Part shown: positions 1,471-54,056 of the stretch, in pieces | How positions within the stretch are numbered: position 1 is the stretch's first letter | Layout of the letters: the number at the start of each line of letters is the position of its first letter | Assembly (NCBI GenBank): GCA_964252035.1 | Contig: OZ176200.1 | Length of the DNA: 64,000 nt | Source of the DNA: Podarcis erhardii | Taxonomy: Eukaryota | Direction: 5' to 3' (one strand) | The notes under the pieces: model-generated | The model's database searches: none | Told to the model about the DNA's origin: nothing | Seen by the model: only the letters and a program-made list of their open reading frames with translations | Position numbers and translations under genes: made by a program

Positions 1471-2648
1471 GGGCATAAATATTTGCTTCATTTTCTTTTC
1501 ATTATTATTATTTCTACATCTCATTGAGTGTAACCACAAGCTAGTGATTTGTGCCCCCGTAATGAAACCAAATCTGTAGATGAAAAGTATTTAGAAGATA
1601 AATACATAATATTGATTTTGTTTACATGTTGATCCTTGCAGTGCAGTTGTTGCATGCTCCTGGTGAAGAAATAGGCAACAATGCAAGATCAAGGCACCTA
1701 ATTCAAGAGAGAAGTTAACTTGATTTTAATATTTCTAGTCACATGGTGCAGAAGCGTAAGCCATTTGATCATTCAGTCCTGCTGCTGAGCAGCACAGTTT
1801 CTAGGCACACCAAATTTCCATTGTCTCCATATTACCAAATGCACTTCTTCCACACCACCAACATAGCACTGGTGCCATCATCTTAACAACTTCCAAGTCC
1901 TGAATTTTATCAGGCCAACTTGCAGACAGCAAGAAAATGACCTTTCAAGCAGAGCCTGATGCATATAACACAGTGATGTCAACCATTATCCCAAGTTGCC
2001 ACAGTTGCTCTGCATTGAATGAGAAAATCAGCTTAAGGTTCTCTGTGCCCCATAATAATATTAAATAAAGGCTGTAAATCCTAGTTATTAGAGATGCTTG
2101 AACTCTTTGTTGTTAATGTTGCCTCTTGATTCAGCCCCTTCATTGTTAATGGCTGGTCTAACAACCCATCTTAACCTCTTTGAATGTATTCATGATTCAT
2201 AAGTATTTGACAACAGTGTCAGAATTTAAGTCCATTGATTGTTTATAAACTGTTTACTCAGTTTGTTATTTGTGTGATTGGCCACACATGCCAATCTCTC
2301 TGATTGGAAGGCTGAAGTTATTTGCTTAGGAAGACGTTGCAGCGAATAAAATGTTTCTGAGCAATAAGGATTTTTTTTTCAAGTTAGGAAACTGGATTCA
2401 CCAATAAATGGCAAATGAACCATCAACATAAATAACAAACTATGCCAAGATATTATTTTATTTGTATATCAATGTTCACACATCAGCTGGGGGTGGGATA
2501 GGTTATATTTTTCAGATTATTTTATCAGGTCTACTATTTTCCATTTGGTTCTATTGTAAATGTTCAGACAAAGAGTTTTAAAATATGAAAAATGCCTGGC
2601 TTCATATGATCAATGATATCCAATAATAATAATATCCCTTCTTTAGAA

Positions 2649-3028: not shown

Positions 3029-4269
3029 CTCTAGAGGTTCAGTTAGAATTTTGAAACAGACATTTGCTCACGTGGTTAAAAATGTCCCTGTTTTATATGT
3101 GTACCCTAGCAGATAATTTTGAAAAGTGGATTTTGTGGTCCTACACTATCTATCTGAGGGATATAGGAATCACTGGTTACAGCTGTCGCTGGGCTGGTGG
3201 AGCAAAGGTGGGAATTAAAGTGCAAAAGCAGCAGGTATTACATTTAAATTGTCTCGTGAAGTCCCTTTTCAAAGTATCCATGCAGTGGAAGATCCAAGGC
3301 TTGCTTGCCGCTCTGTCTCCACATCCATTTTCATAAGGAACTCATGCATATTATATACAAACAGTTTCATTCTCGCTTTCCATAAACATGCAACTGGACA
3401 GTCTAAACAAACACAAACAGGTGTGAATACTTTGAATGTGAATACATTAATTAATAGATGGAGAAATTATTAGCGCTCACAATGTAATTAATGTTGAGAT
3501 TAAATATTCAGTTATATTGAATCATGAAATGTACAAGGCCCTTTAAATGAATATATGATTGGAGGGGTTCAGGATTTGGAGTGGTGAGAGAGACCATGGT
3601 TTTCTCTAGGAACCACCCCCAATATCCCTCTCCCACTAAAATAAGATGGATGATCTCAAAGGATAAGAAATAATAAGGAACACTGTTACAAATCAGACAC
3701 ATATATACACCCGTGTCCCTCTGGTGCAAATACACAACTCCAAATTAAGGTCATAAGAGCAGCATGTGGTGTGTGTCAATGAGCAGGAGTGACACCTAAC
3801 CAAATACAAATTCATTTGGAGATTCTGCAAAGCAGGTGCAAATTACTTAGCACCAACCACACAGAGCAACCAGTTCACCAGGAATGATTAGTAGTAGTTA
3901 CTCTTGTTTACTAGGTAGACTTAGTGAGAATCATGCTGTTCACACACAAATCTTGCTTAAAATTGGGAAATGTACTTTGAATAAGTGATTATTATGATAA
4001 TTTGAGAGGACATCTCAAATTAAATGGGTAAATTGTCCCAGAGGCAGAAGGCTTATTTATTTCCCGCCCCCCCCCAACCTAGGACATTTTCTCATTCTTC
4101 ATTAGCCTGCATAATATATATAAATGCATAAAGTAACTGCTTAGTTAGGAAGTGCATGCAATATATAATCATTTTAAAGTGTTTGGGGATACATTTTCTT
4201 AAGAGTAGATGTGAATTTAAATAACATACATGGACAAATGCCCTTATTTAATGCTTGACCTTTCTTTGT

Positions 4270-4702
4270 AAACTGCATTGTACACGTGTTATATAACTCT
4301 TTATAAAAGTACTCAGGCAAGGAGTCAGCAAGGCAAGTGCAAGGGAAATATTTATCTTCAGACAAACAAAAGGCATCCTGGTGAACAATGCCATTGTGCA
4401 TAATTACTTTCAGTTTAATATTAACAAAAAGGAAATGAATGCATACAGAAGACCTAAGAGACATTGTTCACAGGATAAATTTGATTGACTGCCACACATA
4501 TTTTGTGGCAATAATTCTGGAAGGAGTTTAGGGGTGAGATGAAACGCCGGACAAAAGAGAAGATAGCAAGCAGTGCTTCAAAAGTTGCCACACAAGCCAG
4601 TGGTGGAGCACATCTGACACCACAGGAAGCTCAGGTCGCTTGGAAAGTTGACTCAAAGTTCATCACAGAGATTTCTGACTGTGACATCACTACAATGCAT
4701 AG
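4270..4702 (+). pseudogene. Degenerate Myb/SANT-like DNA-binding exon of the Harbinger element
   Basis: 4518-4702 reads WKEFRGEMKRRTKEKIASSASKVATQASGGAHLTPQEAQVAWKVDSKFITEISDCDITTMH then AG|GTGAG. This resembles the W..K..K.K.A....GGG...LTP.E motif ending Harbinger Myb/SANT domains. The upstream part (GKYLSSDKQKASW*) has stops, and a TAA lies at 4512-4514. Confidence 0.65.
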
Positions 4703-5000
4703 GTGAGCTTTTTGCTAGGTTCACAGACATTTACTGTCACAATCACAATAAGGTGTATTGAAAGATGTTCTTTGGGATCCAGTACAGTTGTATGTGTTAC
4801 GGGTGCAGCACCGTGTGCATTTTATGAAGTGCCACCTGCACTTTTCAGTCTCTAAATTTTAGTCTGCCCAACTATTTGCCCAAACACAAACACTCTGGTT
4901 TCCCAACTGGCTTCTTTCTGTGTGTTGTCCGATGTATGTAGATTCCTCCATCTGCCTGGCCTCAGATACAGTGGTTGTTGCTCCTCTATTTGATTGCCAG

Positions 5001-5857
5001 ATGTCACTGGGCAGCAAGATGGGGAGGTTCCTGGATCTTCTGGACAGCCCAGGCACCAGAGAGGAAGTTCACCATCCACACCTGCAGAAGAGCAAGAATC
5101 TTCAGTGCCAGCTTCTGATGAAGATTCACCAGCCAGAACTACAGAGAGTTGGCCATGGCCATTGTCATCATCTGAAACACACAGCAACCTGGGGGAAGAT
5201 TTTGAGGGATTTCCAACACCAGAGCGGACTCCGCAGTGTACAATGGACATACAATCTCCTGGGGATCAGTCTCTCAGTAGGACTCCCCAGTATGAGAGTG
5301 ACTCTCCTGTGGAGGGAAATGATGAAATGAACGAAGAGCACCATGGTGTTCAGCCTGTCCCTAGGGATCGGGGTTGGAGAGGGCAAACTCAGCTGACAGA
5401 GGGAGAGAGGTTATTAATGGAAACCAATAGTAGGATTGTACAGCTGCTGGAAAATATCAAGAGGGAGCATGCACAGTCCATGGGTCTCATGTCCCAGTCC
5501 ATGGGCCGGATGGAGCTGCAGCTAGGCATTGTGGCTACATCCACAAGAGCCATCCATAACTACCTGTCTGAGATTTTAGCTTTCCTCAAACAACCAAGGA
5601 CACAGGTCCTTGAAACACGTATCTCCCAAAGAGCCACCCCTCATGTTGAGTTAACGAGTGCCTCAACGTGGACTGGTGAGGATGCAGTGGCAATGCCCAC
5701 TGGATACTTACCAAGGGATGAAGGGATTAATGACTCTCAAGAAACACTGCAAGCCACACTGCCTCGTCGCAGTGGCCGAATGCAGAGAGCCATAACAGAA
5801 AGGGCCTCGTTGCCCATGCCCATGCGCCAAGCAAAGGGGGGAGGGAAGAAAAAATAA
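5001..5857 (+). CDS. Intact terminal exon of the Harbinger Myb/SANT-like gene (S/E/P-rich linker, coiled-coil-like segment, basic tail); expression unproven
   Basis: Stop-free frame 4994-5857 in the ORF track. The frame opens right at a pyrimidine-rich acceptor CTCCTCTATTTGATTGCCAG|AT (phase 1), with TGA at 4991-4993 just upstream. Composition is typical of Harbinger accessory-protein C-termini. Confidence 0.5.
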
Positions 5858-6329
5858 TTTATCACACTAGTGATAGTATTTTTAAGGGTTTTTTTTAATG
5901 TGCCTGTCCTTTTAATTCTTAGCCATAAGGCCATGAGTGGCAGAACTTGACCATTTTTACATTTGGCTAACATTGTATTCTGGCTGACTAGATTAGTCTT
6001 ACATTTTGTAGTTTATATTTGCATTGTTAACAATGTGTGCTACTGGTATTTGAAGAACATTTGCTTCTGTTCTTTCACTTCAGCTTCATGAGAGCATTTT
6101 TTTACACTGTGCCAGACATTCATTGCTTTTCTTACAAATACAAATCATTTCTGGACACAGTTGTTTTTTGAGTTTTCTTTTTCCATTATCCCCCCTTCCC
6201 CCTTTCCCTCTGAGCAAGCATTCTGGAGTTTTTGGTAAGTATGTGGGTCTTGGCAATATTCGCCTCAGAAATTGTGTTCGATCAGTCTTTGCCTGGTGTT
6301 TCTGGCATGCTGGCCTGAGGTGTTGGGAT

Positions 6330-7270
6330 CAGCCTGTAAGTGCCTTTTTTGATAAAAATCTTATCCTCTGTGGGTCTGACCAGATTAATCTCTTGCCTAT
6401 TTTGTGGAAATTACATATCTTGGCTGGGTTGTGTAATAAGCAACATGCCAGGACTATATTGCAGCATTTGTGACTTGTACAAAAACTGTGCCAGCAAACC
6501 TATCTAGGCACATGAACTACACTTTCAAAAGCTCCTTCCTTGTTGAACTGATGGTTTGGCAAGCAACATTGTTATCCCATGGGGAGATTTAGAAACAGAG
6601 GAAAATAGCAATGCATTTATTATATGTGAATCACATAAAGAAATATCATAGGAGAAACTATCCCTAATACTATCACAGACACTTACAGATCAAAGCAATC
6701 GCCTTCCTTGTAGCCAGACCTTCTCAGAATTTAAGAGTCATAACACGCTGTTGCGTTCTGTGCCACAATGTCTAAATAACAGCTTTGCATTGCAGACGAT
6801 ATGAAAATCTCTCCTCTTCCTTTAGGCCACCTCATTTACTGATGCTAAGAGTGGTCCTAGCACACTAGGCAGATAACTAATGCACATGGGTTGGAGAGCA
6901 TTTTTATTACTGTTGGGACTGCCTCTGTGAGGGTTGGTTAAAAAGCGGGACACAAAAGCATCTAGATGCATATAAGGAATACAGAGTGGCTTCTGAGTGG
7001 TACTCAAGATCATCCTGTTTTCACCACCAAACGGGGTTGTGTGGTCGCCACCACTGTTACAGGCACAGTGTAGGCCCTGCTTCACTTTCCAGTTTCACTT
7101 TGGAGCTAAATTCCCTAAAGAGCATATTTGTGAGAGCATATTTATCAAGCCCATATCTAAATCCAAGTTTGTGGCTGTATCTAAACAGGCTGTGGACCAT
7201 GTGGGCCATCTCTTCCACCTACTCTTGTTTCAGACGGAAGAAAACCTGAGAGCAAGAAGCATTTTGCTGC
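6330..7270 (-). pseudogene. Harbinger (HARBI1-like DDE) transposase pseudogene
   Basis: Minus-strand pieces FRYGLDK, PSVLGPLL (6846-6869, cf. PNV.GAID), IVCNAKLLF, ELLKV*FMCLD and KCCNIVLACCLLHN (6428-6469, cf. ACC.LHN) occur in the expected order, interrupted by several stops and frameshifts. Confidence 0.8.
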
Positions 7271-7558
7271 AGTACAAACCAGCCATAATATGCTTCTTAG
7301 TGAAATATTTGCTTGTGGCTGCTTTTTGCTAAGTGACTGGGCTAATGGTGAAATGCAGCTAGTGTGGGCTAACCCCTCATGCAGGCACAACGTACGGTTC
7401 AGGTATCTGTCCTGAGAGATGAGCTGTCATGGGTGTGCTGTCTTGACCATAAACTCTAAATGCACCCGGTCTGTCAGGGATGACCTTTCACACCTGCATA
7501 CCACTTGTGCCCCATCTGTGCCTGTTTTATTTCTTGTTTGTTTGTTAAACATAATATA

Positions 7559-7719: not shown

Positions 7720-10700
7720 TATATATAGATGCCTTTATAAATAAATACATTTCAAATTGAAGCATGTAAGAATCATGATGCAAGAATACACATTCTTACA
7801 AAATTACATTAAAAAACAACAACCAAGGGGAAGTGTCACAAGCAAGTATGAAACCAAGTCCAGTCCAATGGATTTTGTTAAGGTTCCAATGTAGCTTTCA
7901 AAGTCCTAAACAAAAACAAGCTGCAGAGCTCTTTGAAAATTAGCCTTTTATTAATATGTTTGAAAAGGGAAATACATGGAGTTCCACAAACATCCTGAGA
8001 TCAGCCTAGATCTACAATATAATGAAGATGTGTTTATTTGCATTATGTCACTCTAAAAGTGTGATGGAATTGGGGAGGGGGGGTATTCAGAATTTGACAA
8101 ATATACTACAGTTCAAACATAACCATTGTTGGAAAGTCCAGATTTCCTCCCTAAATTTAATACATTTAATTCATTGGGTTATACTGCATCCCAACTTCAG
8201 TATGCGATTAAAAAAAAAATCAGCACAAAATTCATTCTTTGCAGTAATATACAAAGCGCCCTCCCCATTCCAACTTGTTTCAGCTATCTGTGATTAGAAA
8301 GGGTTGCAATACCTGCCATTTGAGTGGAAAAAGCTGTAGGGCAAGGAAAAATGAGCTGACAATAATAAGATCAACAAAAGATAGAGTTTCCCACTAACCT
8401 AATGTGTGGTGGCAATATCAGATTTTGTTAGTGAATACCTGCAAACTGATATTGTAGTCAGATCTAGTGCTTGGATCAGACTTCCAATACTGTCTTGCGA
8501 AATAATGGAGGTATGCATGGTTTTTATCATTTTCAAAGTGAATATACCCATGCTTTTTTCTTGTATCTGTCAAAACCTATTCATTATTTCCCTGTAGTTC
8601 TCATTGTCTGGCTAGAAATATGGCTACGTGTGTCTTTTCAGTTACAAAAGTTATGAGTCTTTATGTGGAATATTACATTACTTGCAGACATTGAGTAACA
8701 AATACTTCCCATCTTCAAAATCTTTCACTGTTGATCACAAAAGGTTTGTGGCATCATTTACAGGACTAGAGAGGCATAACACAAAATCTTCCCTCTTGGT
8801 GGTGGATATACCAGCATACCCAAATGTCAAAGATGAAACCTGTAAGGTTTATGTTTTACTGCAAATTGGAAAGGTTTAGTCATAGTTTGAAAGACAGAAT
8901 TCAGATTTCTGCTAAATTGAGTATAAATCTTTCACATCACATTTGAATCTTTTAAAAAGCAGGCAAAAAAAATAGAATACTGAAAGATATTGATATTTAC
9001 AAATAATCTATAGCATTGTCCAGTTCCATGATGTTGGCAGTAGATCTTGAGCCTTCTCAGTGACTTAAGAATCTGCTTTTCTATGACAATTTTCTTCGCA
9101 GGTAGAGAAGTTAACTGTGATTCCTATAAACACCATTGCCCTGATCCAGCTATCCTTTGTGGGCACAAGGGCTCTGATCTCACCCAACCACAGGATCTTC
9201 TCCATTCACTTCAGTGGTCGAGGCATCTCTGGTATCACATGCATAGAGATATGCACATAGATCTTTTACATCCACTGCTGTGATTTGAGAAACCCACACA
9301 TGCAGGGGCTCCTTGTGCACATTGCAGCACTCACGGGGCTCTGGTTCAGGAAGCGTCTCTGCATTTAACTAGATGTGCTACATTAAAATCCATTTTCCTT
9401 TTCCCATATACCATTCTAAACCACACTCTTAAGAGATGAATATGCTCTACATATCTAATTACAATCTCTAATTTCAACACTCTGCATGGGTGGAATTGTC
9501 TGTAGAAAATTATTGAGGTGACTGTATTGAGCTGGTAACTAATGGGCTAGTTTCTCTTTTTTCCTAAAGCAGTTTGCAATGCAGGTATTTTGTATTTAAT
9601 TCTAGAAAAATCAGTTGGGAAGTATGATGCCTTTAAGACTTCAGTTGTCGGACATGATGAAAAAAAGAAATTGGTGGAGTCTCTTCCAGTTGTTACATAA
9701 CTTTTTATGTATGCATATATGCTGAGTATCCAGGGCCCTGTGGTTAGGATGAATATTTTGCTAACTTTGCTTTGATAATCTAAATGTTTAAAAAACACCA
9801 CTGCATATATATAATCTGACTGCATTCTCTGAACATTGATACTGAAGGTGTGGCAAAGAAAGAATATAGGGCTATTTTTTATAGTATAAGGTTGGCTCTT
9901 ATTCCAAGTGTGGAGGATGAATTGATGTGTGATCTTAGATCAGTAAAATGACTCAGTTTCAACATAAATATAAAGGGATGATACCCATTGTATAATGCTA
10001 TAATCCAGTTGTTGCCTAACTCTAGATTTGAACATTCCTCTTGCATCTTAAAAGGAAATCACTTGTATCAATTGCTTCTATTTTGGTTTGTGTTTGTAAT
10101 TTGTCGCATTCTGCATTGTGCCTATTGGATCCAAATTTCCCTGTGCTACAAAGGATAGAGATAAATTTTGTGTGGTTGGCCTCTATAGCTCACTTAAAAC
10201 TGAGGGCTGATTCTCTTCATAACCTTGTCTGTGACGGGCTGCTTTTATTTATCCAGCTCAGATTAGTTTTCCTACCTTTTATCCATAGTGAAGTGGTCAT
10301 ACTATGACTTTGAGATCACAGTTTGATGGCCATCACTCAAACATACTCTTTGAACATTTGTGGCAAACAGTAACACCATCTGAGTTTGCGGTCAAAATGT
10401 TTCATGACTACTTCCTCATAGGCAAATGCAGGAAAATAGTACTCCAGAGTTTAGAAAGTGGTTTGCTACTAACAACGTGGCCATGAGAATTAGCCCTGAC
10501 ATATTAATTGCCAGGCTTATAGCAAAGTTCCTAATGAAGATTTGAAACTTGACTCATTGGACCTAAGTATGATTCATTTAACATTTAGAAGTCCATAGAA
10601 AATTAAATATTTGCATATTTAAGAGACTTTAAAAAGTGCTGTTATAGCAGTGCCAAATCGTTTTGTCTAATAGCCTGACATCAGGAATAGGTTACAAAGT

Positions 10701-11124
10701 AATAGCATAAAGAGCACTTAAAAATACCTATTATTGTCTAAAATTTAATTAGCATTCTAGTGACTACTGTGTGGAATAGTGCTCTAGAGGTGTAAAATTT
10801 CTAAAGGTTTTCTTTCCATTTCTATATAGATATTTTCCCTTCACATTTTGAAGGTTTGAAGAAGAGGATTGTTTTTCGAGTCACACTAAGTAAACATTAA
10901 ATGCATGCAGGCTTAAAACTAAAGCATGCATGTTACGCAGCAGCAATAAAAGTGCTCGGCTTGCACGACTTACGATGCTGAAGCATTGCCTTGTTAAATT
11001 GCCAAAATCCCCTTTTTATTTGCATCTTTAAAAAAAGTTAAACTCTTAATTTCACATTGCATTATTTAGATTTTCAGTCTTTGGACAAATTAGATTTATT
11101 TTAGCAAATATTTCTGTGTTACAG

Positions 11125-11255
11125 ATAAAGTTGATGAAATAGTACCAGTTTCCAAGCCATCAAGAATTCCAGACAATGCAGCCGTGGACTCAAGAGTGGC
11201 AACAATTAAACAACGACCTTCCAGCAGATGCTTTCCCTCGGCTACAGATATGAAT
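11125..11255 (+). CDS. SHANK2: SHANK2 coding exon (DKVDEIVPVSKPSR...ATIKQRPSSRCFPSATDMN)
   Basis: TTACAG| acceptor, |GTGAGT donor, 131 nt, phase 1 to 0. Translation matches recalled SHANK2 DKPEEIVPASKPSR...VATIKQRPSSRCFP..DMN. Confidence 0.95.
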
Positions 11256-11747
11256 GTGAGTAAATGTACTTAAGAGTTCTGATATTTTGACTAAATTAAG
11301 ATCTTTCCAGATTCCTAATAGTAGAGGATAATCCTCCAAGCTTTCCTTTTCTTTTTGCACACTTATCCTTAATTCTTCTGACTTGTGCCCATGATCACCT
11401 TCTGGAATGACACTCCTCACTGTAACGGATTAAGATTTATTTCCTAGGAAAATTTGCTTGGAAGTTAGTCCCATTGAAGTAAATGAGAGGCACCTCTATA
11501 AGTGTGATATATTCATGTTCTGTAAAATTACACCTTTGTTATACCATATTCTTGAACTGGATCCATAGCAATGGTATATTCAAATGCCCTTTTAATGGCT
11601 AATTTCCAAAGTTTGAAATCAACATCAAAACCTTCCTCATGATTTATTGTAATGGTGCAATGGGACTGTATCTAGATATGAAATAGATCTAAATATTGAA
11701 TCAGATCTTGTCCAAGAATCACACATAATGAACTTAAATGTCTTCCT

Positions 11748-17650: not shown

Positions 17651-18928
17651 GTTACTCAGAGGTTAGTTTTAAATGAAATCATTCTTCTTTGCTAAAATTG
17701 TGTTTTTATAATCTGTGTGTATGTGATAAGATGGTATTTTTGTTCAAAATAATGACAGAAAGCTTTAGGAAAATATATATTAATTGGTCCATTTTGCTGT
17801 AGAAGTATTTGGTTGTACAATGAGGAAGTTAAACAGAGCCAACATATGCTTTATGGAAATATATTTTTCTGCAAAATGATGTTGTTTTAGTCATATTGGA
17901 AACTTAGTCAAAGGTCTTATTCCCCACAATTTCAATTGCTATTCTTGCTGTAATAGCAATGGCAAGCAAAAACCGAAAAGATACATTTAACACCAAACTT
18001 TAATTAGAGCAGGTTGCAATATGGGAGTTAAAGCTGAGAGGCAACATTTTTCTTGTCCTTTCTTCTCCTTTATGTTTGAAGGGATATTCTGTTCCCTGGT
18101 GAAATAATGAAGTTATTCTTTGCAACTCTCTACATAAAAATAGTTACAGGAAATACAGTGAAAGAAATGTATATTATCAACTACTACAAGGAATAGCAAT
18201 CAGCCCATAGCTTAGATCGACCCTTTTGCTGCTGTTGTTTCATCCTGAACACAAACCAGCAAGCCAGCTATATTAATTATTACTTCAGAGACTGTGTAAG
18301 GAGAGCATCTCTTTGCTCTGTCTGTACCAGGAAGTACCACAAGTAGCTTGTGAAGCCATTGCCTCATGCTGTGACCTGCCCTGGTTAGTGCTTCACGTCT
18401 AGCTTTCCAGCATGAAATCTAGCACCTCATACAACAGGTAGCAATCTCACTCCAAAGTTACATATGTTTGTTTGGAAGGTTGTTTCACAATGCCTCTCTG
18501 TCCACTCTCTTTACCCATGTAGAAACATTGTTTTATCATGTTTCATGCATGGCCACCTATGCACAAATGCCAACATGCATACATTTATTTATTTTTAAGC
18601 TTTCCTTTCCTTTCTTCTTCCAGTCTTTCACAGCTTTTGGCTGACAACTTCCTTTTATGCACAGTTCATAAAAAAAAATTACTTTAGGGATGCACAATTC
18701 TCTGTGCACATATATGTAAGAAAATGCTGGAAGATCAGCATAGGGACACTGAGGCAAGCAAAAATGTAAACTGAAGATCTAGTTGCAGACATATTCTAAA
18801 ACCAAACCATGCATAGTAATATATAATACAGTATTTTCTGTACCTGGTTTACTATGTCTTTGGTGACAATGGATGATAATTAAAATTCAAGAGCAATTTA
18901 AAAATTGTAGCTTGTGATTTTTTTAAAG

Positions 18929-21344
18929 GGATAACAGAGGAAGAACGGCAATTTTTGGCTCCTCCCATGCTAAAATTTACCAGAAGTCTATCCATGCCAG
19001 ACACCTCTGAAGATATCCCTCCTCCTCCACAGTCTTTACCTCCATCACCACCACCTCCATCTCCTTCTCTTTACAACTCCCCCAAATCTCCAGTGTCTAG
19101 AATATATGGGACAATTAAGCCTGCATTTAATCAGAATTCAGGTGCAAAGTTAGCTATTTCAGGTAGATCTGAAAATATGGGAACGGTGATAAGGGACAAA
19201 GGGATATATTACCGGAGAGAGATGGACCGTTATTCTCTAGATTCTGAGGACTTATATAGCAGAAATGCCTCAACTCAGGCAAGCTTCAGAAACAAGAGAG
19301 GTCAGATGCCGGAGAACCCATACTCTGAAGTTGGAAAAATAGCAAGCAAAGCAGTGTATGTCCCAGCCAAGCCAGCAAGACGGAAGGGAATGCTAGTGAA
19401 ACAATCTAATGTTGAGGATAGTCCAGAAAAAACCTGCTCTATTCCAATTCCAACTATCATTGTTAAAGAGCCATCTACCAGCAGTAGTGGGAAAAGTAGT
19501 CAAGGAAGCAGCATGGAAATTGACCCACAGTCTTCAGAGCAACCAGGACAGCTCAGACCTGAAGATAACTTGACTGTCAGTAGTCCATTTGCAGCAGCCA
19601 TTGCAGGGGCAGTGAGGGATAGGGAGAAAAGATTAGAAGCCAGGCGTAACTCTCCAGCTTTCCTTTCCACAGATTTGGGAGATGAGGATGTTGGGCTATC
19701 GCCTCCAATGCCACGTTTGAGACAGTCTAAGTTTAGTGATGAGGGAATGTTTGGTAATGAAGACAACTTTAGGCAACTTGTATCACCATCTCCTATCCCA
19801 GCACCTAGAGAGCCTGAAAATATTTTTAATAGCAGTGAATCAAGTAATCAAAGTGATGCAAGGACACCAAACCCTTCAACCCCAACATCAATGGGTTCAG
19901 AAAATAATGTGTTGGCAACTCAGAATGCTGGTATGTCCAGTTTGGATAACTATGTTCATCCACTCACAGGGAAATTACTGGATCCAAATTCACCTTTAGC
20001 CCTTGCCCTTTCTGCCAGAGATAGAGCCATGAAGGAACAAACCCAGCAAATTCCAGGGAAAGGAGAATCTGGCAAAGCAGACCTTAATAAACCCCTTTAT
20101 ATAGATACAAAGATGAGGTCCAACATCGAAACTACATTTCCAGTGACAGCTACAATTGCTAGGCAAAATACGCGTGGTCCACTAAGGCGGCAGGAGACGG
20201 AGAACAAATATGAGACAGATACGGGGAAAGAGAGGAGGCCTGAAGAAAAGAAGAACATGCTGATCAATATTGTGGATACCTCACAGCAGAAGTCAGCTGG
20301 TTTGCTCATGGTTCATACGGTAGATACAGCGCAGTCCAATGATACCCCTGATGAAAAGGAAGAGGAAAGTGCTGAGATAGATGTGGATACTGAAAAGCCT
20401 CCACCAGAGGCACAGGAAAGTACAGAAACAGCTGAAAGTGGACTAGATGAAGCTGACATGCCTGAGCTACCTGCATCTCCCTGCAAAACTATTGTAGCAG
20501 TTGGCTCCGTTGATGATCCAATCATTTTACCGTTCCGTATCCCTCCACCCCCTTTAGCATCTGTTGATCTTGATGAAGATTTCATCTTTACTGAGCCATT
20601 ACCACCGCCTTTAGAATTTGCTAACAGTTTTGATATCCCTGATGACCATTCTGTCCCAGGCTCTGCACTAACAGACTTGCTCAAACACAGAAAAAATGGA
20701 ACTCCGCCTGCTTCATTCAATCCTACTCAACCCTCAAATTCAATAGACAGTAAGAAACCAGTGGGTCTTTCAAACTGTTTGCCTGCCTCATTTTTACCAC
20801 CGCCTGAAAATTTTGATAACGTCACTGACTCTGGGATTGAAGAGGTGGACAGTCGAAGCAGTAGTGACCATCACCTAGAGACAACCAGCACTATCTCAAC
20901 TGTGTCCAGCATCTCTACCTTATCCTCTGAAGGTGGTGAGAACTTGGATACTTGTACAGTCTATGCAGATGGGCAAACATTTCTGGTGGACAAACCCCCA
21001 GTACCTCCTAAGCCAAAAATGAAGCCCATAATCAACAAAAGCAATGCACTTTACAAGGATGCGCTAATTGAAGAAACTGTAGATAGTTTTGTTATTCCTC
21101 CACCTGCCCCACCCCCACCTCCTATCAGTGCACAGCCTGGTATGGCTAAGGTTGTACAGCAAAGGACCTCTAAGCTATGGGGTGATGTAACGGAGGTTAA
21201 AAGCCCAGTTCTCTCAGGCCCAAAGGCTAATGTCATTAGTGAATTGAACTCAATACTGCAGCAAATGAACAGAGAGAAATCATCAAAGCCAGGGGAAGGA
21301 TTGGAGTCACCTCCAGGAATAAAAACAGCAAGTCTTAGTACAAG
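18929..21344 (+). CDS. SHANK2: SHANK2 large proline-rich exon (Homer-binding LPPPLEF at 20599-20619; cortactin-SH3-binding KPPVPPKP at 20992-21015)
   Basis: TTTTAAAG|GG ATA ACA GAG acceptor (phase 1), AG|GTAAAT donor (phase 2), 2416 nt. Long stretches are identical to recalled SHANK2 (GITEEERQFLAPPMLKFTRSLSMPDTSEDIPPPP; RGQMPENPYSEVGKIASKAVYVPAKPARRKG; DSGIEEVDSRSSSDHHLETTST). Confidence 0.99.
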
Positions 21345-22759
21345 GTAAATGCAACTAAATTATTTTTTAAGTCTATAGTGTCCATGAGTTTAAATTGCCT
21401 TTGCTTTCATTAATAATGTCTTAAATACCTTTTAATCTTATGTTTAAAATTCATGGTATTAATGCTCTAGTATTAATTTTTGACACTCTTAAAAATCTAC
21501 AAAATACGTTAATTGCTATTATCATTTTTCACCATTGCCCTTCTTTGTTTATGATATTAACACGTATTGAAATATGCTATCTTTTACTATGCTGCTAGTT
21601 AAGAATCAATTTCACCTCTCCTTTCTAGAATCCCTAGTTATGTGTTTTATGGTTTACCCCTAACTTCTACACATTTAATGAAAAGGTTTCAAAGTGGCTC
21701 TAAGTGACAGCTGACTGGTTATAGTTCTGATTTAATTTCAAGTTGATATTGCTTCAGTAGTAGCTGTCTTATTTAGAATGTGTTGAGTAGTTTTGTGTGT
21801 TTTATTTTGCATGATACATATGTTTAGTTTACAATGCAGAGGGCTACATGTGGCGCTGCATGTATTTGCCAAGGTTTTCGTCTCCCTGCTGCAATCCATT
21901 ACAACCTCCAACAAAGCACTCCTGAGAATCCAGTTGGAGGTGCAAGGAAAGAGAGAAATCAGCTGTCCCACATGCAAATGTAGAAGTGTTTTCTGCTCAC
22001 ACCTTTGGATCCCAGCCAGAATCTCTCTATGCTTTTTTAGTAAATGAAATAAAAATCTGTCCTTTATTTGATAACAAATATTCCAATGCAACTTTAGAAA
22101 AAAACAAAAGTGACACATTTAATCTCAAAAATATTTATTTTATTGCATGGACTTCAGCACATGCAATCAAGGAGATGCACTAATGGACCATATTCTGGTT
22201 TCATTTTTTAAAATCAAGTTTCCTGCTGGATCATGCCAGTGGCCCATTTGGTCTAGCATCTAGTTCTCACACTGTGCACATTCAGTTGTTCCAGTAAAGC
22301 GATCAACGTGCATTAATGATTCGTTGTTTGAGCTGTTTGGTTTTAATTGTTGGAAGAAGAGTAGTCACAAAGCCTGTCCTTTAGTCTTTTCTAGGGTGGC
22401 CAGAGAAAAAGGATACAAGGGCTTTTGCACCTCTCTCAATTGTGGAATTTTGTTGTGTGCATCTTATCATGCAGGGGTGAAAGCAGCTGCACTTTCAAAA
22501 ATTTCATTTTCTACACAGCTATTAAAAATGTGAGAGTTCTGTCATCCTCTCCTCTTCATCAGAGCATACAACTGCCATGGTGAATAATACATTACTTTTT
22601 AAAAACTTTTTTAACAAAAATGTTCTCCGTGGTGGTAGTATATGGTGAGGGACAGCTTTTGCATCCCATCTTGAACCACCCTGCCTTACAGCCAGTACCA
22701 CTGAAAGATTGCATTTGACAGACATATTTTTAAAGTCAATATTGTGAAATTTATTGAGC

Positions 22760-33931: not shown

Positions 33932-34499
33932 TACTAAGAGCATTCAGCTAGTTCAAAACACAATGGTCTGCCTCCTGAAGGTAAAGTTCCCAAGCATCAG
34001 AAGTGAGTTCTTCTAGGATTCTGGCCTATGCTTAGCAAGACTGGTTTCAGCATATAACTTACCTTGGGAACGGCCTCCTCTTCTGTACCCTGCTGTGATC
34101 TCTTAGATGTACTTTCCTTAGTGCATCATCTGTGCAACAAATTAGAACAATGACACAGAAAAGCATCCTTGGTTGTTTTGTCCAGTTTTGGAACTGTCTT
34201 GTGAGATTCACCACACTTAAACGCCTTCTGCTACCATAATGCTCTTTGGGGCAATGATTCAGTGGCTAGAGTTAATTTTTAGCAGCATATCTGAGATTGT
34301 CTTTGACTTTTAAAATATTTGTAAAGCTTGCTCATAGTTTTCTGCCACTATTGTTTTCATAAAGTCGTATGGTATCTCTTTGGCATTTATATATATATTT
34401 AATACGTAATTGTGTCATAAGTTAGCAATGAGCTGATTTGTATTTTTAATACGTGGAGAGTCTGAATATTTCCTGTTCATTTTTATTTGTTTATTTCAG

Positions 34500-35073
34500 G
34501 GGCACAGAAGTCATGAGCACTGTCTCAGGTACTCGAAGTTCAACCATCACTTTTACTGTCCGGCCTGGGACTAGCCAGCCAATCACACTGCAGAGCAGAT
34601 CCCCAGACTATGATAGTAGGACACCAGGAGCAAGACATGCTCCAAGCCCAGTGGTTTCACCAACAGAAATAAGTAAGGACATCATGCCAGCTCCTCTGAC
34701 TGCTGCTGCTCCAGTTGCATCTCCTTCTCCAACACTTTCTGATGTTTTTAGCCTACCCAGCCAGCCTCCTTCGGGGGACCTCTTCGCTTTGAACACAGGG
34801 CGCAGCAGGTCTCCTTCTCCCTCAATCTTGCAACAGCCAATATCAAATAAGCCTTTTACAACTAAGCCTGTCCACCTGTGGACCAAGCCAGATGTGGCAG
34901 ATTGGTTGGAGAGTTTAAACTTAGGTGAACATAAAGAGACCTTTATGGATAATGAAATAGATGGCACTCACTTACCAAACCTTCAGAAGGAAGACTTGAT
35001 AGACCTTGGAGTGACTAGAGTTGGTCACAGAATGAACATAGAAAGAGCCTTGAAACAGCTACTGGACAGATAA
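34500..35073 (+). CDS. SHANK2: SHANK2 last coding exon including the SAM domain and stop
   Basis: TTATTTCAG|G acceptor completes AG|G (Arg). Ends KPVHLWTKPDVADWLESLNLGEHKETFMDNEIDGTHLPNLQKEDLIDLGVTRVGHRMNIERALKQLLDR*, the SHANK2 SAM domain. Confidence 0.99.
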
Positions 35074-52207: not shown

Positions 52208-52640
52208 CTAAAGGGAAAGGGACACATTACTACTATGCATGACACAATAAAAGGATATGTGAATTTCTTAAACTCATGTACTAACATATAACATAAGTCA
52301 TATAAGTCAAGCTAGTATGCCTTTCCCCCAGCTTTGTTTTTCAGAAAGCACAGACCCCAAATATTTATAGGTTTGTATCTGATGCTACTCTAAGGAGCTC
52401 AATACAGCACAGAGAGGCTTCCCAGGTAAATCTCCTGCCAAGCATTAGCTACACACAGCCCTGCATAGCTTTAGAAAAAGAAGGAACCGTCTACTCAAAA
52501 GTATTACCTCCCAGCTCCTGTCACTTACTGAATCTTTTCTAGCCTGAACATCTCAAACTACCAGATCTGAGAACAGTCTACCATTGCCTAAAGCCATGAC
52601 CAAAGAGATCTCTCCTAGGTCAAAAGATAAGCTGACGAAC

Positions 52641-52824
52641 CTGCTTGATACTGGTTTCCTGCCCCAGCCACTTCATACACCGTCTCAGATTCATACTCTG
52701 GCTTCCGCTGACTGACTGCTTCTTGGTAGTCAGATTCTTCAACTTTGTTGTTGGTTTCTGGCTCGTGTGCGGCTGAGTAATTTGCATTTGAATTCTTGTA
52801 GCCAGACTCAAAGGAAACGGCATC
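52641..52824 (-). CDS. CTTN: Cortactin exon (DAVSFESGYKNS...ETVYEVAGAGNQYQA)
   Basis: CCCTCTAG|GAT acceptor, G|GTTCGT donor, 184 nt, phase 0 to 1; resembles recalled chicken cortactin. Confidence 0.93.
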
Positions 52825-54056
52825 CTAGAGGGAAGGAGAGGCAGCCAGAACATAACAGACAGAGAGAACTTCAAGTACATTGTTGTTACAGAAATGCAGT
52901 TATTACTGCCTCCCTTAGGAGGAGGAAACCTCAACCTTGGGGGAAGGGTGGTGGGGAATGCAGGGACTCTTAAGGCCTGCTCCAATCCACAGCCTGGACT
53001 GGCATGTGTTCTTGAACTGCTGCTTGCCTGCACATAGGGTGGAGAGGAAAGTGCACACAGAGAGTGTGCACATGTGTACACAAGCACACACAGAGAAACC
53101 TCTTTTTTTGCATATATGCTACAGTACAAAAGTAGAAGTTATATTCATAGCTCCGTCTGTTTTGCCTCTGACCCCACCCACAGCTGGCATGAGGCTCTCA
53201 GAATGTCCCTGTTGGGCTAATAAAGGTGCCCCACCCCCAGTACACAGGACACAGTGCACACCACACCCACATTAATGCATATAGGGCTAAAGTGTGCAGG
53301 GGAAGGACACCCCTGTGCCAGCCCCCTGCACCCCCCAAATGCTCATCTGCTCCACCTGACACAGAAGCCCCCTTTAGACCTTCCTCAGCGCTTTCAGCTG
53401 AACATGCTTCGAAGCCTCCCCATAACCAGGAACTCCTCCTTATCGGAGTTTTCAAAAATGAGGAGCACATGAAGACAGCCCATGGACTGCTTGCATTTTA
53501 GAGACTGCTGCAAGCTGACATTTTGCAAGTGCCCTTCCCGTGAAGATACACAGCGAGTGCCTTATGAGAGTCCGACAGATCAATTCCTTGGCAAAGTAAT
53601 TTGGCAGACTCGAGGAGAAGCTGGGGTGGTGCACTGCAACAGCCGCATCACAGTCAATGTGGGAATACAATTGCACAGCATGTTTGTTCATTATACAGCT
53701 GGAAGTCTGCTCCTCACTACGCCATGATAATTCCTTCAAGCGTATTCTCATTTCTCCCCATGATCTCTCCCTTGTCGAATGTTCCAAATTTAGCACAGCA
53801 AATGTGATTAAATTTATTACAATGTTATTGTCCTGAGTGGTATAAGGCCGCTTCTGGTGGTGCCCCTTGTGCATATAGCCCACCATTGTCTCCTCTGACA
53901 AGCAGAGGAGGAACAGACCTCTTTCACAGCAGTTCCTACCTGACAGGTAGATGCCAATGATTGTATCTGGGAGCTTCAGCATGCAAAGCATTTGCCCTTC
54001 AGCTAAGGTTTTGCTTTTTTCCTGTTTGGCTAAATGACTATAGCTAGCAAACTAAC

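What the first reader, a model, noticed from the sequence alone, without database searches (positions are those of the whole stretch)
5001..5857. Intact Harbinger-derived exon in phase with SHANK2: candidate SHANK2-transposon fusion terminal exon
Seen: a stop-free frame of ~285 codons starts exactly at a pyrimidine-rich acceptor (TTGCCAG|AT GTC), on the SHANK2 strand, in the intron upstream of exon 11125. The same element's transposase and Myb/SANT exon both carry several stops and frameshifts. The acceptor is phase 1 and begins with AT, like SHANK2 exon 11125 (ACAG|AT AAA), so the upstream SHANK2 donor could splice here in frame. The element's own Myb-exon donor (AG|GTGAG at 4702) is phase 2 and no longer fits. 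Established: host-transposon fusion by exon capture is known in vertebrates, and Harbinger Myb/SANT proteins have been domesticated. Inference: splicing here would give a SHANK2 isoform keeping the upstream domains but replacing the Homer/cortactin-binding region and SAM with an S/E-rich linker, a coiled-coil-like segment (LLMETNSRIVQLLENIKREH...) and a basic tail (RRSGR...GGGKKK). Selection on that product could explain the asymmetric decay. Caveat: I saw no canonical AATAAA after the stop until ~7740.
Basis: partly seen in the sequence, partly recalled or inferred. Interest (0 to 1): 0.75.

Follow-up and report, generated by a model that had tools for sequence, protein, structure and literature searches.

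The report
Ancient transposon-derived coding exon inside SHANK2
An open reading frame in a SHANK2 intron is a real protein-coding exon, probably left by a Harbinger jumping gene, kept almost unchanged in lizards, turtles, crocodiles and birds, and public chicken, turkey and crocodile gene models already splice SHANK2 exons onto it.

Summary
The frame 4994-5857 (+) has no stop. An AG acceptor ends at 5000, and the exon starts at 5001 in phase 1.

It is not a chance survivor. The same single-copy exon lies in the same SHANK2 intron in Varanus, another squamate, sea turtles, crocodile, ostrich and raptors. It is intact in all of them, and every indel is a multiple of 3. Variable sites per codon position are 33/28/118, and dN/dS is 0.07-0.15.

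The first 80 codons come before the first in-frame Met and follow an in-frame TGA in the intron, yet they are equally constrained. They must therefore be translated from a spliced upstream exon. Both upstream SHANK2 donors are phase 1. Ensembl chicken and turkey proteins read ...SELEEL|DVTGEQ..., and a Gnomon crocodile model reads ASVRKKK|DVTGEQ. Birds also have a stand-alone 312-aa model that starts in an internal first exon; only birds have an ATG there.

A Harbinger origin is plausible but only softly supported. A decayed Myb/SANT-like remnant lies upstream (Pfam E about 0.1). A broken DDE_Tnp_4-like remnant lies downstream on the minus strand (language-model match only). The exon itself has no detectable relatives outside sauropsids.

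I saw no RNA directly. The 3' end is not mapped.

The parts
4300..4702 (+). Decayed Myb/SANT-like domain remnant of the ancestral element (pseudo-exon). It is open only from 4515 to 4702 in this lizard. The donor AG|GT at 4702/4703 is phase 2.
   Evidence: Frameshifts differ between lineages, and there is no codon periodicity (20/15/17). The orthologous turtle piece L004:9144-9269 returns only Pfam Myb_DNA-bind_5 (E 0.093) and MADF (E 0.1), both below threshold. The donor CATAG|GTGAGC is invariant in 7 taxa.
4703..5000 (+). Conserved intron segment ending in the acceptor. The last 55 nt or so are identical in all seven taxa. An in-frame TGA lies at 4991-4993.
   Evidence: The Jukes-Cantor (JC) distance from lizard to archosaur or turtle is 0.14-0.19, lower than synonymous divergence in the exon.
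5001..5857 (+). Protein-coding exon with a phase-1 acceptor, 284 full codons plus stop. It encodes an acidic S/E/P-rich disordered part, one long invariant helix and a basic tail.
   Evidence: Intact in 7 taxa with indels in multiples of 3. Variable sites per codon position are 33/28/118. dN/dS is 0.07-0.15. Amino-acid identity to birds, turtle and crocodile is 88-96%. The AF2 model has a helix at residues 133-195 with pLDDT 78-94.
5858..6380 (+). Highly conserved 3' flank, the putative 3' UTR. It has no canonical poly(A) signal and an invariant donor-like G|GTAAGT at 6234/6235.
   Evidence: JC distance of 0.08-0.11 from lizard to bird, turtle and crocodile. Alignment and hexamer scan.
6268..7300 (-). 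Broken remnant of a PIF/Harbinger-type (DDE_Tnp_4-like) transposase, lying tail to tail with the coding exon.
   Evidence: Many stops and frameshifts. The orthologous crocodile piece L006:24087-24407 scores 0.90-0.94 to DDE_Tnp_4 / Plant_tran / 'putative nuclease HARBI1' clusters in the ESM Atlas. An ..ACC-LHN..-like motif lies at 6332-6499, recognised from memory of the family. Pfam, PDB and a profile word search found nothing.
11125..11256 (+). Next constitutive SHANK2 coding exon (phase 1), the exon that competes with 5001 for the upstream donors.
   Evidence: 79% identity to a SHANK2 protein. The upstream intron 10797-11124 is 87-89% identical to birds, turtle and crocodile.

Best explanation
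Window 5001-5857 is a functional protein-coding exon. It arose before lizards, turtles, crocodilians and birds diverged, most likely from the second exon of the Myb-like accessory gene of a PIF/Harbinger transposon that landed in this SHANK2 intron. The element's Myb domain and its transposase decayed. The C-terminal exon, its acceptor and about 0.5 kb of 3' flank were kept. The exon is used by splicing from an upstream phase-1 donor. With the SHANK2 donors after ...SELEEL or the ASVRKKK mini-exon, the product is a short SHANK2 isoform. That isoform keeps the upstream domains (PDZ, and SH3/ankyrin depending on the promoter). It replaces the proline-rich Homer/cortactin region and the SAM domain with an acidic disordered linker, an invariant helix of about 63 residues and a basic tail. 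In birds an internal first exon about 4.5 kb upstream gained an ATG, so the same exon can also be made as a stand-alone 312-aa protein. What is shown: the exon's integrity, its orthology, purifying selection, phase compatibility, and the existence of the public models. What is inferred: the transposon origin, which form is translated in the lizard, and what the helix binds.
For: Orthology and synteny: the exon lies inside SHANK2 on the same strand in raptors, sea turtles, crocodile, Varanus and ostrich. In the loci whose flank reaches that far (raptor, ostrich, crocodile, Varanus) it sits between the ASVRKKK mini-exon and the exon homologous to 11125. Selection: the ORF is intact in all 7 taxa. 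Variable sites are 33/28/118 by codon position (chi-square p about 1e-19). dN/dS is 0.07-0.15. 82 consecutive residues are invariant. Need for an upstream coding exon: in all taxa a TGA lies two codons before the acceptor and the first in-frame Met is codon 81. Even so, codons 1-80 show 10/9/42 periodicity (8/8/29 in non-birds) and dN/dS of 0.04-0.15. Phase: both SHANK2 donors are G|GTAAG in phase 1. Public models: chicken A0A8V0ZZV9 and turkey A0A803YIF5 read PDZ...SELEEL|DVTGEQ..., and crocodile XP_019407090 reads ASVRKKK|DVTGEQ. Splice signals: about 55 nt before the acceptor are invariant. Transposon origin: an upstream same-strand remnant returns only Myb_DNA-bind_5 and MADF as Pfam families, and a downstream opposite-strand remnant matches DDE_Tnp_4/HARBI1 clusters. 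The exon is single-copy, with no paralogues.
Against: No RNA reads or junctions were seen for any species. The fused proteins are automatic annotation models. No assembled-run (Logan) ORF spanning the junction was found. The upstream SHANK2 donors lie outside this window. There is no canonical poly(A) signal in the conserved 3' flank. The exon has no Pfam family and no relatives outside sauropsids in an exhaustive search, so its homology to Harbinger Myb-like proteins is not demonstrated. The Myb hits are below threshold (E about 0.1). The transposase remnant has no Pfam, PDB or HMMER support. The Myb pseudo-exon donor is phase 2, so the ancestral reading of exon 2 cannot be reconstructed.
Confidence: 0.7

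Rival explanations
1. The exon belongs to an independent gene nested in the SHANK2 intron, with its own promoter and first exon. On this reading the SHANK2-fused models are annotation artefacts or rare read-through products with no function.
For: NCBI annotates a separate 312-313 aa 'uncharacterized LOC' in more than 30 bird species, from ostrich to passerines. Its first exon and about 300 nt upstream form a block that is 84% conserved in turtle and crocodile and 74% in Varanus, with an invariant phase-1 donor. That looks like a conserved internal promoter.
Against: The ATG of that first exon exists only in birds (ATT in turtle and crocodile, CTT in Varanus), and an in-frame TAA lies 45 nt upstream. 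Non-bird lineages still hold codons 1-80 under purifying selection (8/8/29; dN/dS 0.11-0.15), although no in-frame ATG is available before codon 81. Two annotation pipelines in three species join SHANK2 exons to the exon in frame.
Confidence: 0.2
2. The exon is real and selected but is not transposon-derived. The Myb-like and transposase-like resemblances in the flanks are fortuitous, and the exon arose de novo or from an unknown gene.
For: The exon has no Pfam family and no homologue outside sauropsids. The ESM Atlas scores for the exon itself are low. About 30 minus-strand pieces give no DDE_Tnp_4 hit in Pfam. No terminal inverted repeats were found.
Against: Two independent weak signals point to the two gene types that define a Harbinger element, in a plausible layout. 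Upstream on the same strand, Myb_DNA-bind_5 and MADF are the only families returned. Downstream on the opposite strand, DDE_Tnp_4/Plant_tran/HARBI1 clusters score 0.90-0.94, and all ten best named hits fall in one clan. Both remnants are orthologous across sauropsids and decay independently, as expected for unselected parts of one old insertion.
Confidence: 0.25
3. The block is conserved for an RNA- or DNA-level role only (enhancer, or a regulated 'poison' exon that triggers mRNA decay), and the open frame is incidental.
For: The non-coding flanks (4531-5000 and 5858-6380) are more conserved than synonymous sites of the exon (JC 0.08-0.19 against dS 0.33-0.6). An invariant donor-like GTAAGT lies 380 nt after the stop.
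Against: Strong three-base periodicity of substitutions, dN/dS of about 0.1, and only in-frame indels over about 285 codons in 7 taxa cannot come from nucleotide-level constraint alone.
Confidence: 0.04
4. Chance retention of an open frame in a decaying transposon copy.
For: None beyond the first impression.
Against: The chance expectation is 2e-4 per window. The frame is intact in seven lineages separated since the base of crown reptiles.
Confidence: 0.01

Closest known systems
ERCC6(CSB)-PGBD3 fusion (piggyBac transposon in a host intron, used as an alternative 3'-terminal exon; from my own knowledge)
   Same: A DNA-transposon ORF sits in a host intron on the host strand. Its acceptor captures the upstream host exons. 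The product keeps the host N-terminus and ends in transposon-derived sequence, and it is maintained by selection.
   Different: The captured part here is not a transposase or a DNA-binding domain. It is the C-terminal exon of the accessory Myb-like gene. The event is far older (all sauropsids against primates), and the host is a synaptic scaffold.
NAIF1 and the MSANTD genes, domesticated Harbinger Myb-like genes (PMC9392472)
   Same: The probable source is the Myb-like accessory gene of a Harbinger element, domesticated and single-copy in vertebrates.
   Different: Those genes keep the Myb/SANT DNA-binding domain and stand alone. Here the Myb domain has decayed and only the downstream exon survives. 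No sequence similarity to them was detected. That paper does not mention SHANK2.
Host-transposase fusion genes formed by exon capture in tetrapods (bioRxiv 10.1101/2020.05.07.082677)
   Same: The mechanism is the same: splice-site capture of transposon coding sequence by a host gene.
   Different: That survey concerns transposase DNA-binding domains turned into transcription factors. Neither SHANK2 nor Harbinger occurs in its main text.
Known SHANK2 isoforms (E, A, ProSAP1/B, C; from my own knowledge)
   Same: SHANK2 already uses alternative promoters and alternative 3' ends. The chicken model starts like the ProSAP1 form that begins just before the PDZ domain.
   Different: No described isoform ends in this sequence. 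The exon has no counterpart among mammalian, amphibian or fish proteins in the searched libraries.

Membership tests
Host gene-transposon fusion by exon capture | Coding sequence lies in a host intron, on the host strand, with an acceptor in phase with upstream host exons | tested here: met
   The acceptor at 5000/5001 is phase 1. The SHANK2 donors after SELEEL and ASVRKKK are phase 1 in crocodile, Varanus, raptor and ostrich loci. The next SHANK2 exon, 11125, is also phase 1.
Host gene-transposon fusion by exon capture | A fusion transcript or protein has been observed | tested here: inconclusive
   Only automatic models exist (chicken, turkey, crocodile). No junction-spanning ORF was found among assembled sequencing-run proteins. 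I could not inspect any reads.
Host gene-transposon fusion by exon capture | Purifying selection acts on the captured part | tested here: met
   dN/dS of 0.07-0.15, periodicity 33/28/118, and intact in 7 taxa.
Host gene-transposon fusion by exon capture | The captured sequence is demonstrably transposon-derived | tested here: inconclusive
   The flanking remnants give a Myb_DNA-bind_5/MADF hit at E about 0.1 and DDE_Tnp_4/HARBI1 language-model matches. The exon itself has no homologues.
Harbinger Myb-like-derived genes (NAIF1/MSANTD type) | Retains a Myb/SANT-like DNA-binding domain (Pfam Myb_DNA-bind_5 or a related family) | tested here: not met
   There is no Pfam domain in the exon product. 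The upstream Myb-like remnant is frameshifted or truncated in every lineage.
Harbinger Myb-like-derived genes (NAIF1/MSANTD type) | Detectable sequence homology to Harbinger Myb-like proteins | tested here: not met
   Exhaustive phmmer against 1.84 billion representatives returned only its own cluster and one spurious repeat protein.
PIF/Harbinger element | DDE_Tnp_4 transposase gene next to the Myb-like gene | tested here: inconclusive
   ESM Atlas scores of 0.90-0.94 to DDE_Tnp_4/Plant_tran/HARBI1 clusters for the crocodile orthologous piece. Pfam, PDB and the profile word search were negative.
PIF/Harbinger element | Terminal inverted repeats and a 3-bp target duplication | tested here: not met
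   No flanking inverted repeats. They are not expected to survive an insertion of this age.
SHANK2 gene | The window carries SHANK2 exons on the same strand | tested here: met
   Exon 11125-11256, large exon 18880-21345 (80% identity over 288 residues), and the SAM domain at 34450-35070.

The most novel reading that the evidence does not exclude
All sauropsids make a SHANK2 isoform whose C-terminus is a captured transposon-accessory-protein exon. In it, an invariant helix that may once have bound the transposase replaces the Homer/cortactin region and the SAM multimerisation domain. In birds the same exon has begun to escape its host: a start codon gained in an internal first exon gives a stand-alone protein. 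That would be a gene caught in transit between fusion exon and independent gene.
Probability: 0.4. Interest if true: 0.75.

Novelty: new member of a known kind. Interest (0 to 1): 0.66.

Why it matters
SHANK2 is a core scaffold of excitatory synapses and a neurodevelopmental disease gene. A lineage-wide alternative C-terminus lacking the Homer/cortactin region and the SAM domain would be a substantial, undescribed difference between reptile/bird synaptic proteins and mammalian ones. This C-terminus has 82 consecutive residues invariant since the base of crown reptiles.

For transposon biology, it would be an unusually old capture of the non-DNA-binding part of a Harbinger accessory protein, not of a transposase. 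It comes with a clear internal control: the rest of the element decays independently in each lineage.

Public annotation already holds the pieces, as 'uncharacterized LOC' genes and odd SHANK2 isoforms. No paper in the searched library connects them.

Tried and rejected
- Pfam on the exon product gave only a sub-threshold, irrelevant hit.
- Exhaustive phmmer with the exon found only its own cluster and P0039, a repetitive artefact.
- ESM Atlas with the exon scored 0.78-0.80 with low recognition, so it gives no lead.
- Pfam at E up to 10 on about 30 stop-free minus-strand pieces from lizard, turtle, crocodile, raptor, Varanus and a second squamate gave no DDE_Tnp_4 hit.
- PDB phmmer with two pieces found nothing.
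- A profile word search with aligned orthologous transposase-like pieces (A2) found only orthologous pseudo-ORFs from sequencing-run assemblies.
- A search for junction-spanning proteins with the chicken fusion model, residues 113-233, gave hits covering only one half. The four assembled-run or pigeon candidates I read are unspliced.
- An inverted-repeat search for element ends found only chance pairs.
- Rfam found nothing in the window.
- Complex prediction on two copies of residues 120-215 returned no verdict. It is not evidence either way.
- The alternative frame starting at ATG 5001 is open for about 110 codons in 6 of 7 taxa. Its second codon positions are the most variable sites, so it is not the selected frame.
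- The Myb pseudo-exon was rejected as a coding first exon: it shows no periodicity and has lineage-specific frameshifts.
- Fold search on the AF2 model was not run, because a single long helix gives meaningless matches.

Full report
**What is in the sequence**

On the + strand a frame without stops runs from 4994 to 5857. An in-frame TGA lies at 4991-4993. An AG ends at 5000 after a pyrimidine-rich stretch. The exon would start at 5001 with 'AT' as the second and third bases of a codon, which makes the acceptor phase 1. The stop is TAA at 5855-5857. It is the second-longest stop-free run in the window, and base composition predicts about 2e-4 runs of this length.

The window is the 3' half of SHANK2 on the + strand:
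- Exon 11125-11256 starts ACAG|AT AAA in phase 1 and is 79% identical to a mammalian SHANK2 protein.
- The frame 18880-21345 is the large proline-rich exon.
- The SAM domain lies at 34450-35070.

That includes the phase-2 donor of the upstream Myb-like piece at 4702/4703 and the absence of AATAAA before 7740.

**The exon is orthologous and single-copy across sauropsids**

A word-index protein search found the same protein at 88-95% identity and nothing else. The cluster look-up shows who carries it:
- Varanus, in a model named SHANK2.
- Crocodylus porosus.
- Sea turtles.
- More than 30 bird species from ostrich to passerines, as 'uncharacterized LOC' proteins of 312-313 aa.
- Two UniProt/Ensembl entries, chicken A0A8V0ZZV9 and turkey A0A803YIF5, named SHANK2 or PDZ-domain protein.

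I fetched the genomic loci for three raptors, two sea turtles, crocodile, Varanus, ostrich and one squamate contig from a sequencing-run assembly. In every annotated locus the exon lies inside a SHANK2 gene of 1840-1875 residues, on the same strand. Where the fetched flank reaches far enough (raptor, ostrich, crocodile, Varanus), it sits between the ASVRKKK mini-exon and the exon homologous to 11125.

**Selection**

BLASTN shows one continuous block, window 4531-6540, at 82-85% identity between the lizard and bird, turtle or crocodile. That is comparable to the SHANK2 exon at 11125 with its flanks.

In a seven-taxon MAFFT alignment the exon frame is intact in all taxa. Lengths are 849-858 nt, so all indels are multiples of three. 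Variable sites fall 33/28/118 on codon positions 1/2/3 (chi-square p about 1e-19). Nei-Gojobori dN/dS is 0.07-0.15 for all nine pairs tested. Residues 132-213 of the product are invariant in eleven aligned sequences.

The neighbours behave differently:
- The Myb-like piece 4531-4702 has no periodicity (20/15/17) and carries different frameshifts in birds, turtle and crocodile.
- The minus-strand region beyond about 6400 is close to saturation (Jukes-Cantor (JC) distance 0.47-0.49) and is broken in every lineage.

The 'asymmetric decay' is real, and purifying selection on the exon's protein product explains it.

**The first 80 codons need an upstream coding exon**

In all seven taxa the first in-frame Met is codon 81, and a TGA lies two codons before the acceptor. 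Codons 1-80 are nevertheless under the same constraint. Variable sites are 10/9/42 overall, 8/8/29 in non-birds alone and 5/2/13 in squamates alone, and dN/dS is 0.04-0.15. The roughly 55 nt before the acceptor are identical in all taxa. So the exon is translated after splicing at 5001 from an exon that supplies a start codon and a phase-1 donor.

**Which upstream exon**

The two SHANK2 donors immediately upstream are both G|GTAAG in phase 1. One follows ...KSMTSELEEL and the other follows the ASVRKKK mini-exon. I found the SELEEL donor in the crocodile and Varanus loci and the ASVRKKK donor in the raptor, ostrich, crocodile and Varanus loci. Both lie upstream of this window.

The chicken and turkey Ensembl-derived proteins read ...SELEEL-D-VTGEQ.... 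The chicken model starts like the PDZ-first (ProSAP1-type) form of SHANK2; that comparison is from my own knowledge. The NCBI crocodile model reads ...ASVRKKK-D-VTGEQ....

A third donor exists. The bird LOC models start in a 79-nt exon about 4.5 kb upstream of the coding exon (MVGFQ...PVQVA, donor GCAG|GTAAG, phase 1). This exon and about 300 nt upstream of it are 84% conserved in turtle and crocodile and 74% in Varanus. In Varanus it maps roughly 0.5 kb before position 1 of this window. Its ATG exists only in birds (ATT in turtle and crocodile, CTT in Varanus), and an in-frame TAA lies 45 nt upstream.

My reading is as follows. The block is a conserved internal promoter and first exon. In birds it can produce a stand-alone 312-aa protein. 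In other sauropsids it gives no start codon for codons 1-80, so SHANK2 exons remain the only identified source of translation for that part. This is an inference, because I saw no reads.

**Is it Harbinger-derived?**

The exon product has no Pfam family. It has no relative outside its own orthologues in an exhaustive phmmer search of 1.84 billion representatives; the only other hit is a repetitive artefact. It also has no useful ESM Atlas neighbour. Homology of the exon itself to Harbinger Myb-like proteins is therefore not demonstrated.

The flanks give two weak but concordant signals.

Upstream, on the same strand, decayed pieces recur in all taxa (for example ..AHRIN.. followed by ..KRRTKEKIA..SGGA.LTPQE..). 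The turtle piece L004:9144-9269 returns exactly two Pfam families out of 24,736, Myb_DNA-bind_5 (E 0.093) and MADF (E 0.1). Both are below threshold, but both are the Myb/SANT-like types found in Harbinger accessory proteins. About 50 pieces were scanned in all. Six unrelated families turned up at similar or lower E-values, so the value of this hit lies in its identity, not its score.

Downstream, on the opposite strand, the crocodile orthologous piece L006:24087-24407 scores 0.90-0.94 to clusters carrying DDE_Tnp_4, Plant_tran or the name 'putative nuclease HARBI1', and all ten best named hits fall in one clan. The tool warns that a third of shuffled proteins also reach the all-ten condition. 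Pieces near 6332-6499 and their turtle and crocodile orthologues carry an ..ACC.LHN..-like motif that I recognise from memory of this family. That is a lead, not a test.

Pfam, PDB and a profile word search gave nothing for the transposase remnant, and no terminal repeats survive.

I put the Harbinger origin at about 0.75. The layout would be the Myb-like gene (exon 1 decayed, intron, exon 2 kept) lying tail to tail with the transposase.

**The product**

AlphaFold2 with the orthologue alignment gives low confidence overall (mean pLDDT 53). Residues 1-130 and 212-284 look disordered. There is one long helix at 133-195 (pLDDT 78-94) and a short one at 200-210. The helix coincides with the invariant stretch. 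A self-association test of residues 120-215 returned no verdict, so I make no claim about oligomerisation.

Spliced to SHANK2, the product would keep the PDZ domain and, depending on the promoter, the SH3 and ankyrin parts. It would lack the proline-rich region and the SAM domain encoded at 11125 onward. From my own knowledge of the Shank literature, those parts carry the Homer and cortactin sites and the synaptic-targeting and multimerisation function.

The most likely role is a scaffold variant that couples PDZ ligands to whatever binds the invariant helix. What that partner is remains unknown. A surviving interaction with a domesticated Harbinger transposase is a speculative possibility. 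Earlier notes of this scan report such genes elsewhere in this genome; I did not test them.

**Non-coding constraint**

The flanks 4531-5000 and 5858-6380 are more conserved than the exon's synonymous sites (JC 0.08-0.19 against dS 0.33-0.6). This fits dense splicing-regulatory and 3'-UTR functions, but it is not explained in detail. Two features are invariant and unexplained: the old Myb-exon donor at 4702/4703 and a donor-like G|GTAAGT at 6234/6235.

**Literature**

No paper in the searched library links SHANK2 with Harbinger or describes this exon. The MSANTD2/NAIF1 paper and the host-transposase fusion preprint do not mention SHANK2. Absence from this library is not proof of novelty.

**Limits and rules followed**

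- I did not build or search a joined lizard SHANK2-plus-exon protein. Exons were handled separately by reference, and the fused proteins I used are database entries.
- A human SHANK2 protein and several primate ones appeared in the hit table. I did not fetch, compare or search them further.
- The window has no N.

**Verdict**

- The interpretation as a selected, SHANK2-phased, transposon-derived alternative exon is supported.
- The event dates to the common ancestor of lizards, turtles, crocodilians and birds.
- It is a new member of a known kind (host-transposon exon capture; Harbinger accessory-gene domestication).
- Direct transcript evidence and a rigorous transposon assignment are still missing.

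Noticed in passing
L002:9701-10260 (Harpia); L004:4801-5358; L006:17261-17798; L007:30550-30727, about 0.5 kb upstream of window position 1: A conserved promoter-like block with a 79-nt first exon and an invariant phase-1 donor, inside the same SHANK2 intron. Its ATG is present only in birds (ATT in turtle and crocodile, CTT in Varanus). Spliced to exon 11125 instead, it would give a SHANK2 lacking the PDZ domain.
   Followed up: partly
window 4539-4541: The ATG that opens the Myb pseudo-exon frame (M-KRRTKEK...) is ATG in lizards, turtle and crocodile but GTG in ostrich and raptor. That is the reverse of the bird-only ATG in the internal first exon. Spliced at 4702 to 5001, it would read a frame that stops after about 38 codons.
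   Followed up: partly
window 5001-5330: A second frame starting at the ATG that forms the first three bases of the exon stays open for about 110 codons in 6 of 7 taxa. A strong-context ATG lies at 5019. Its second codon positions are the most variable sites, so it is not under protein-level selection.
   Followed up: yes
window 6234-6241: A donor-like G|GTAAGT about 380 nt after the stop, invariant in all seven taxa. If used, the exon would be internal and the transcript a candidate for nonsense-mediated decay.
   Followed up: no
window 10797-11124: The intron upstream of SHANK2 exon 11125 is 87-89% identical between lizard and bird, turtle or crocodile over about 330 nt. That is as conserved as the exon itself and suggests regulated splice-site choice.
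   Followed up: no
window 1842-2293, 3072-3588, 7247-7387, 8259-8708: Further intronic blocks conserved at 67-81% with bird, turtle or crocodile. Their function is unknown.
   Followed up: no
window 52623-54051 (-): Two stop-free runs of 172 and 199 codons on the minus strand with no Pfam family. I did not examine them further.
   Followed up: partly
P0129 (sequencing-run assembly ORF, orthologous to window about 6825-7290, minus strand): A called 154-aa 'protein' from a close relative reads the transposase remnant through positions that are stops in the window, showing W there. It is a gene-calling artefact, not an intact gene.
   Followed up: partly
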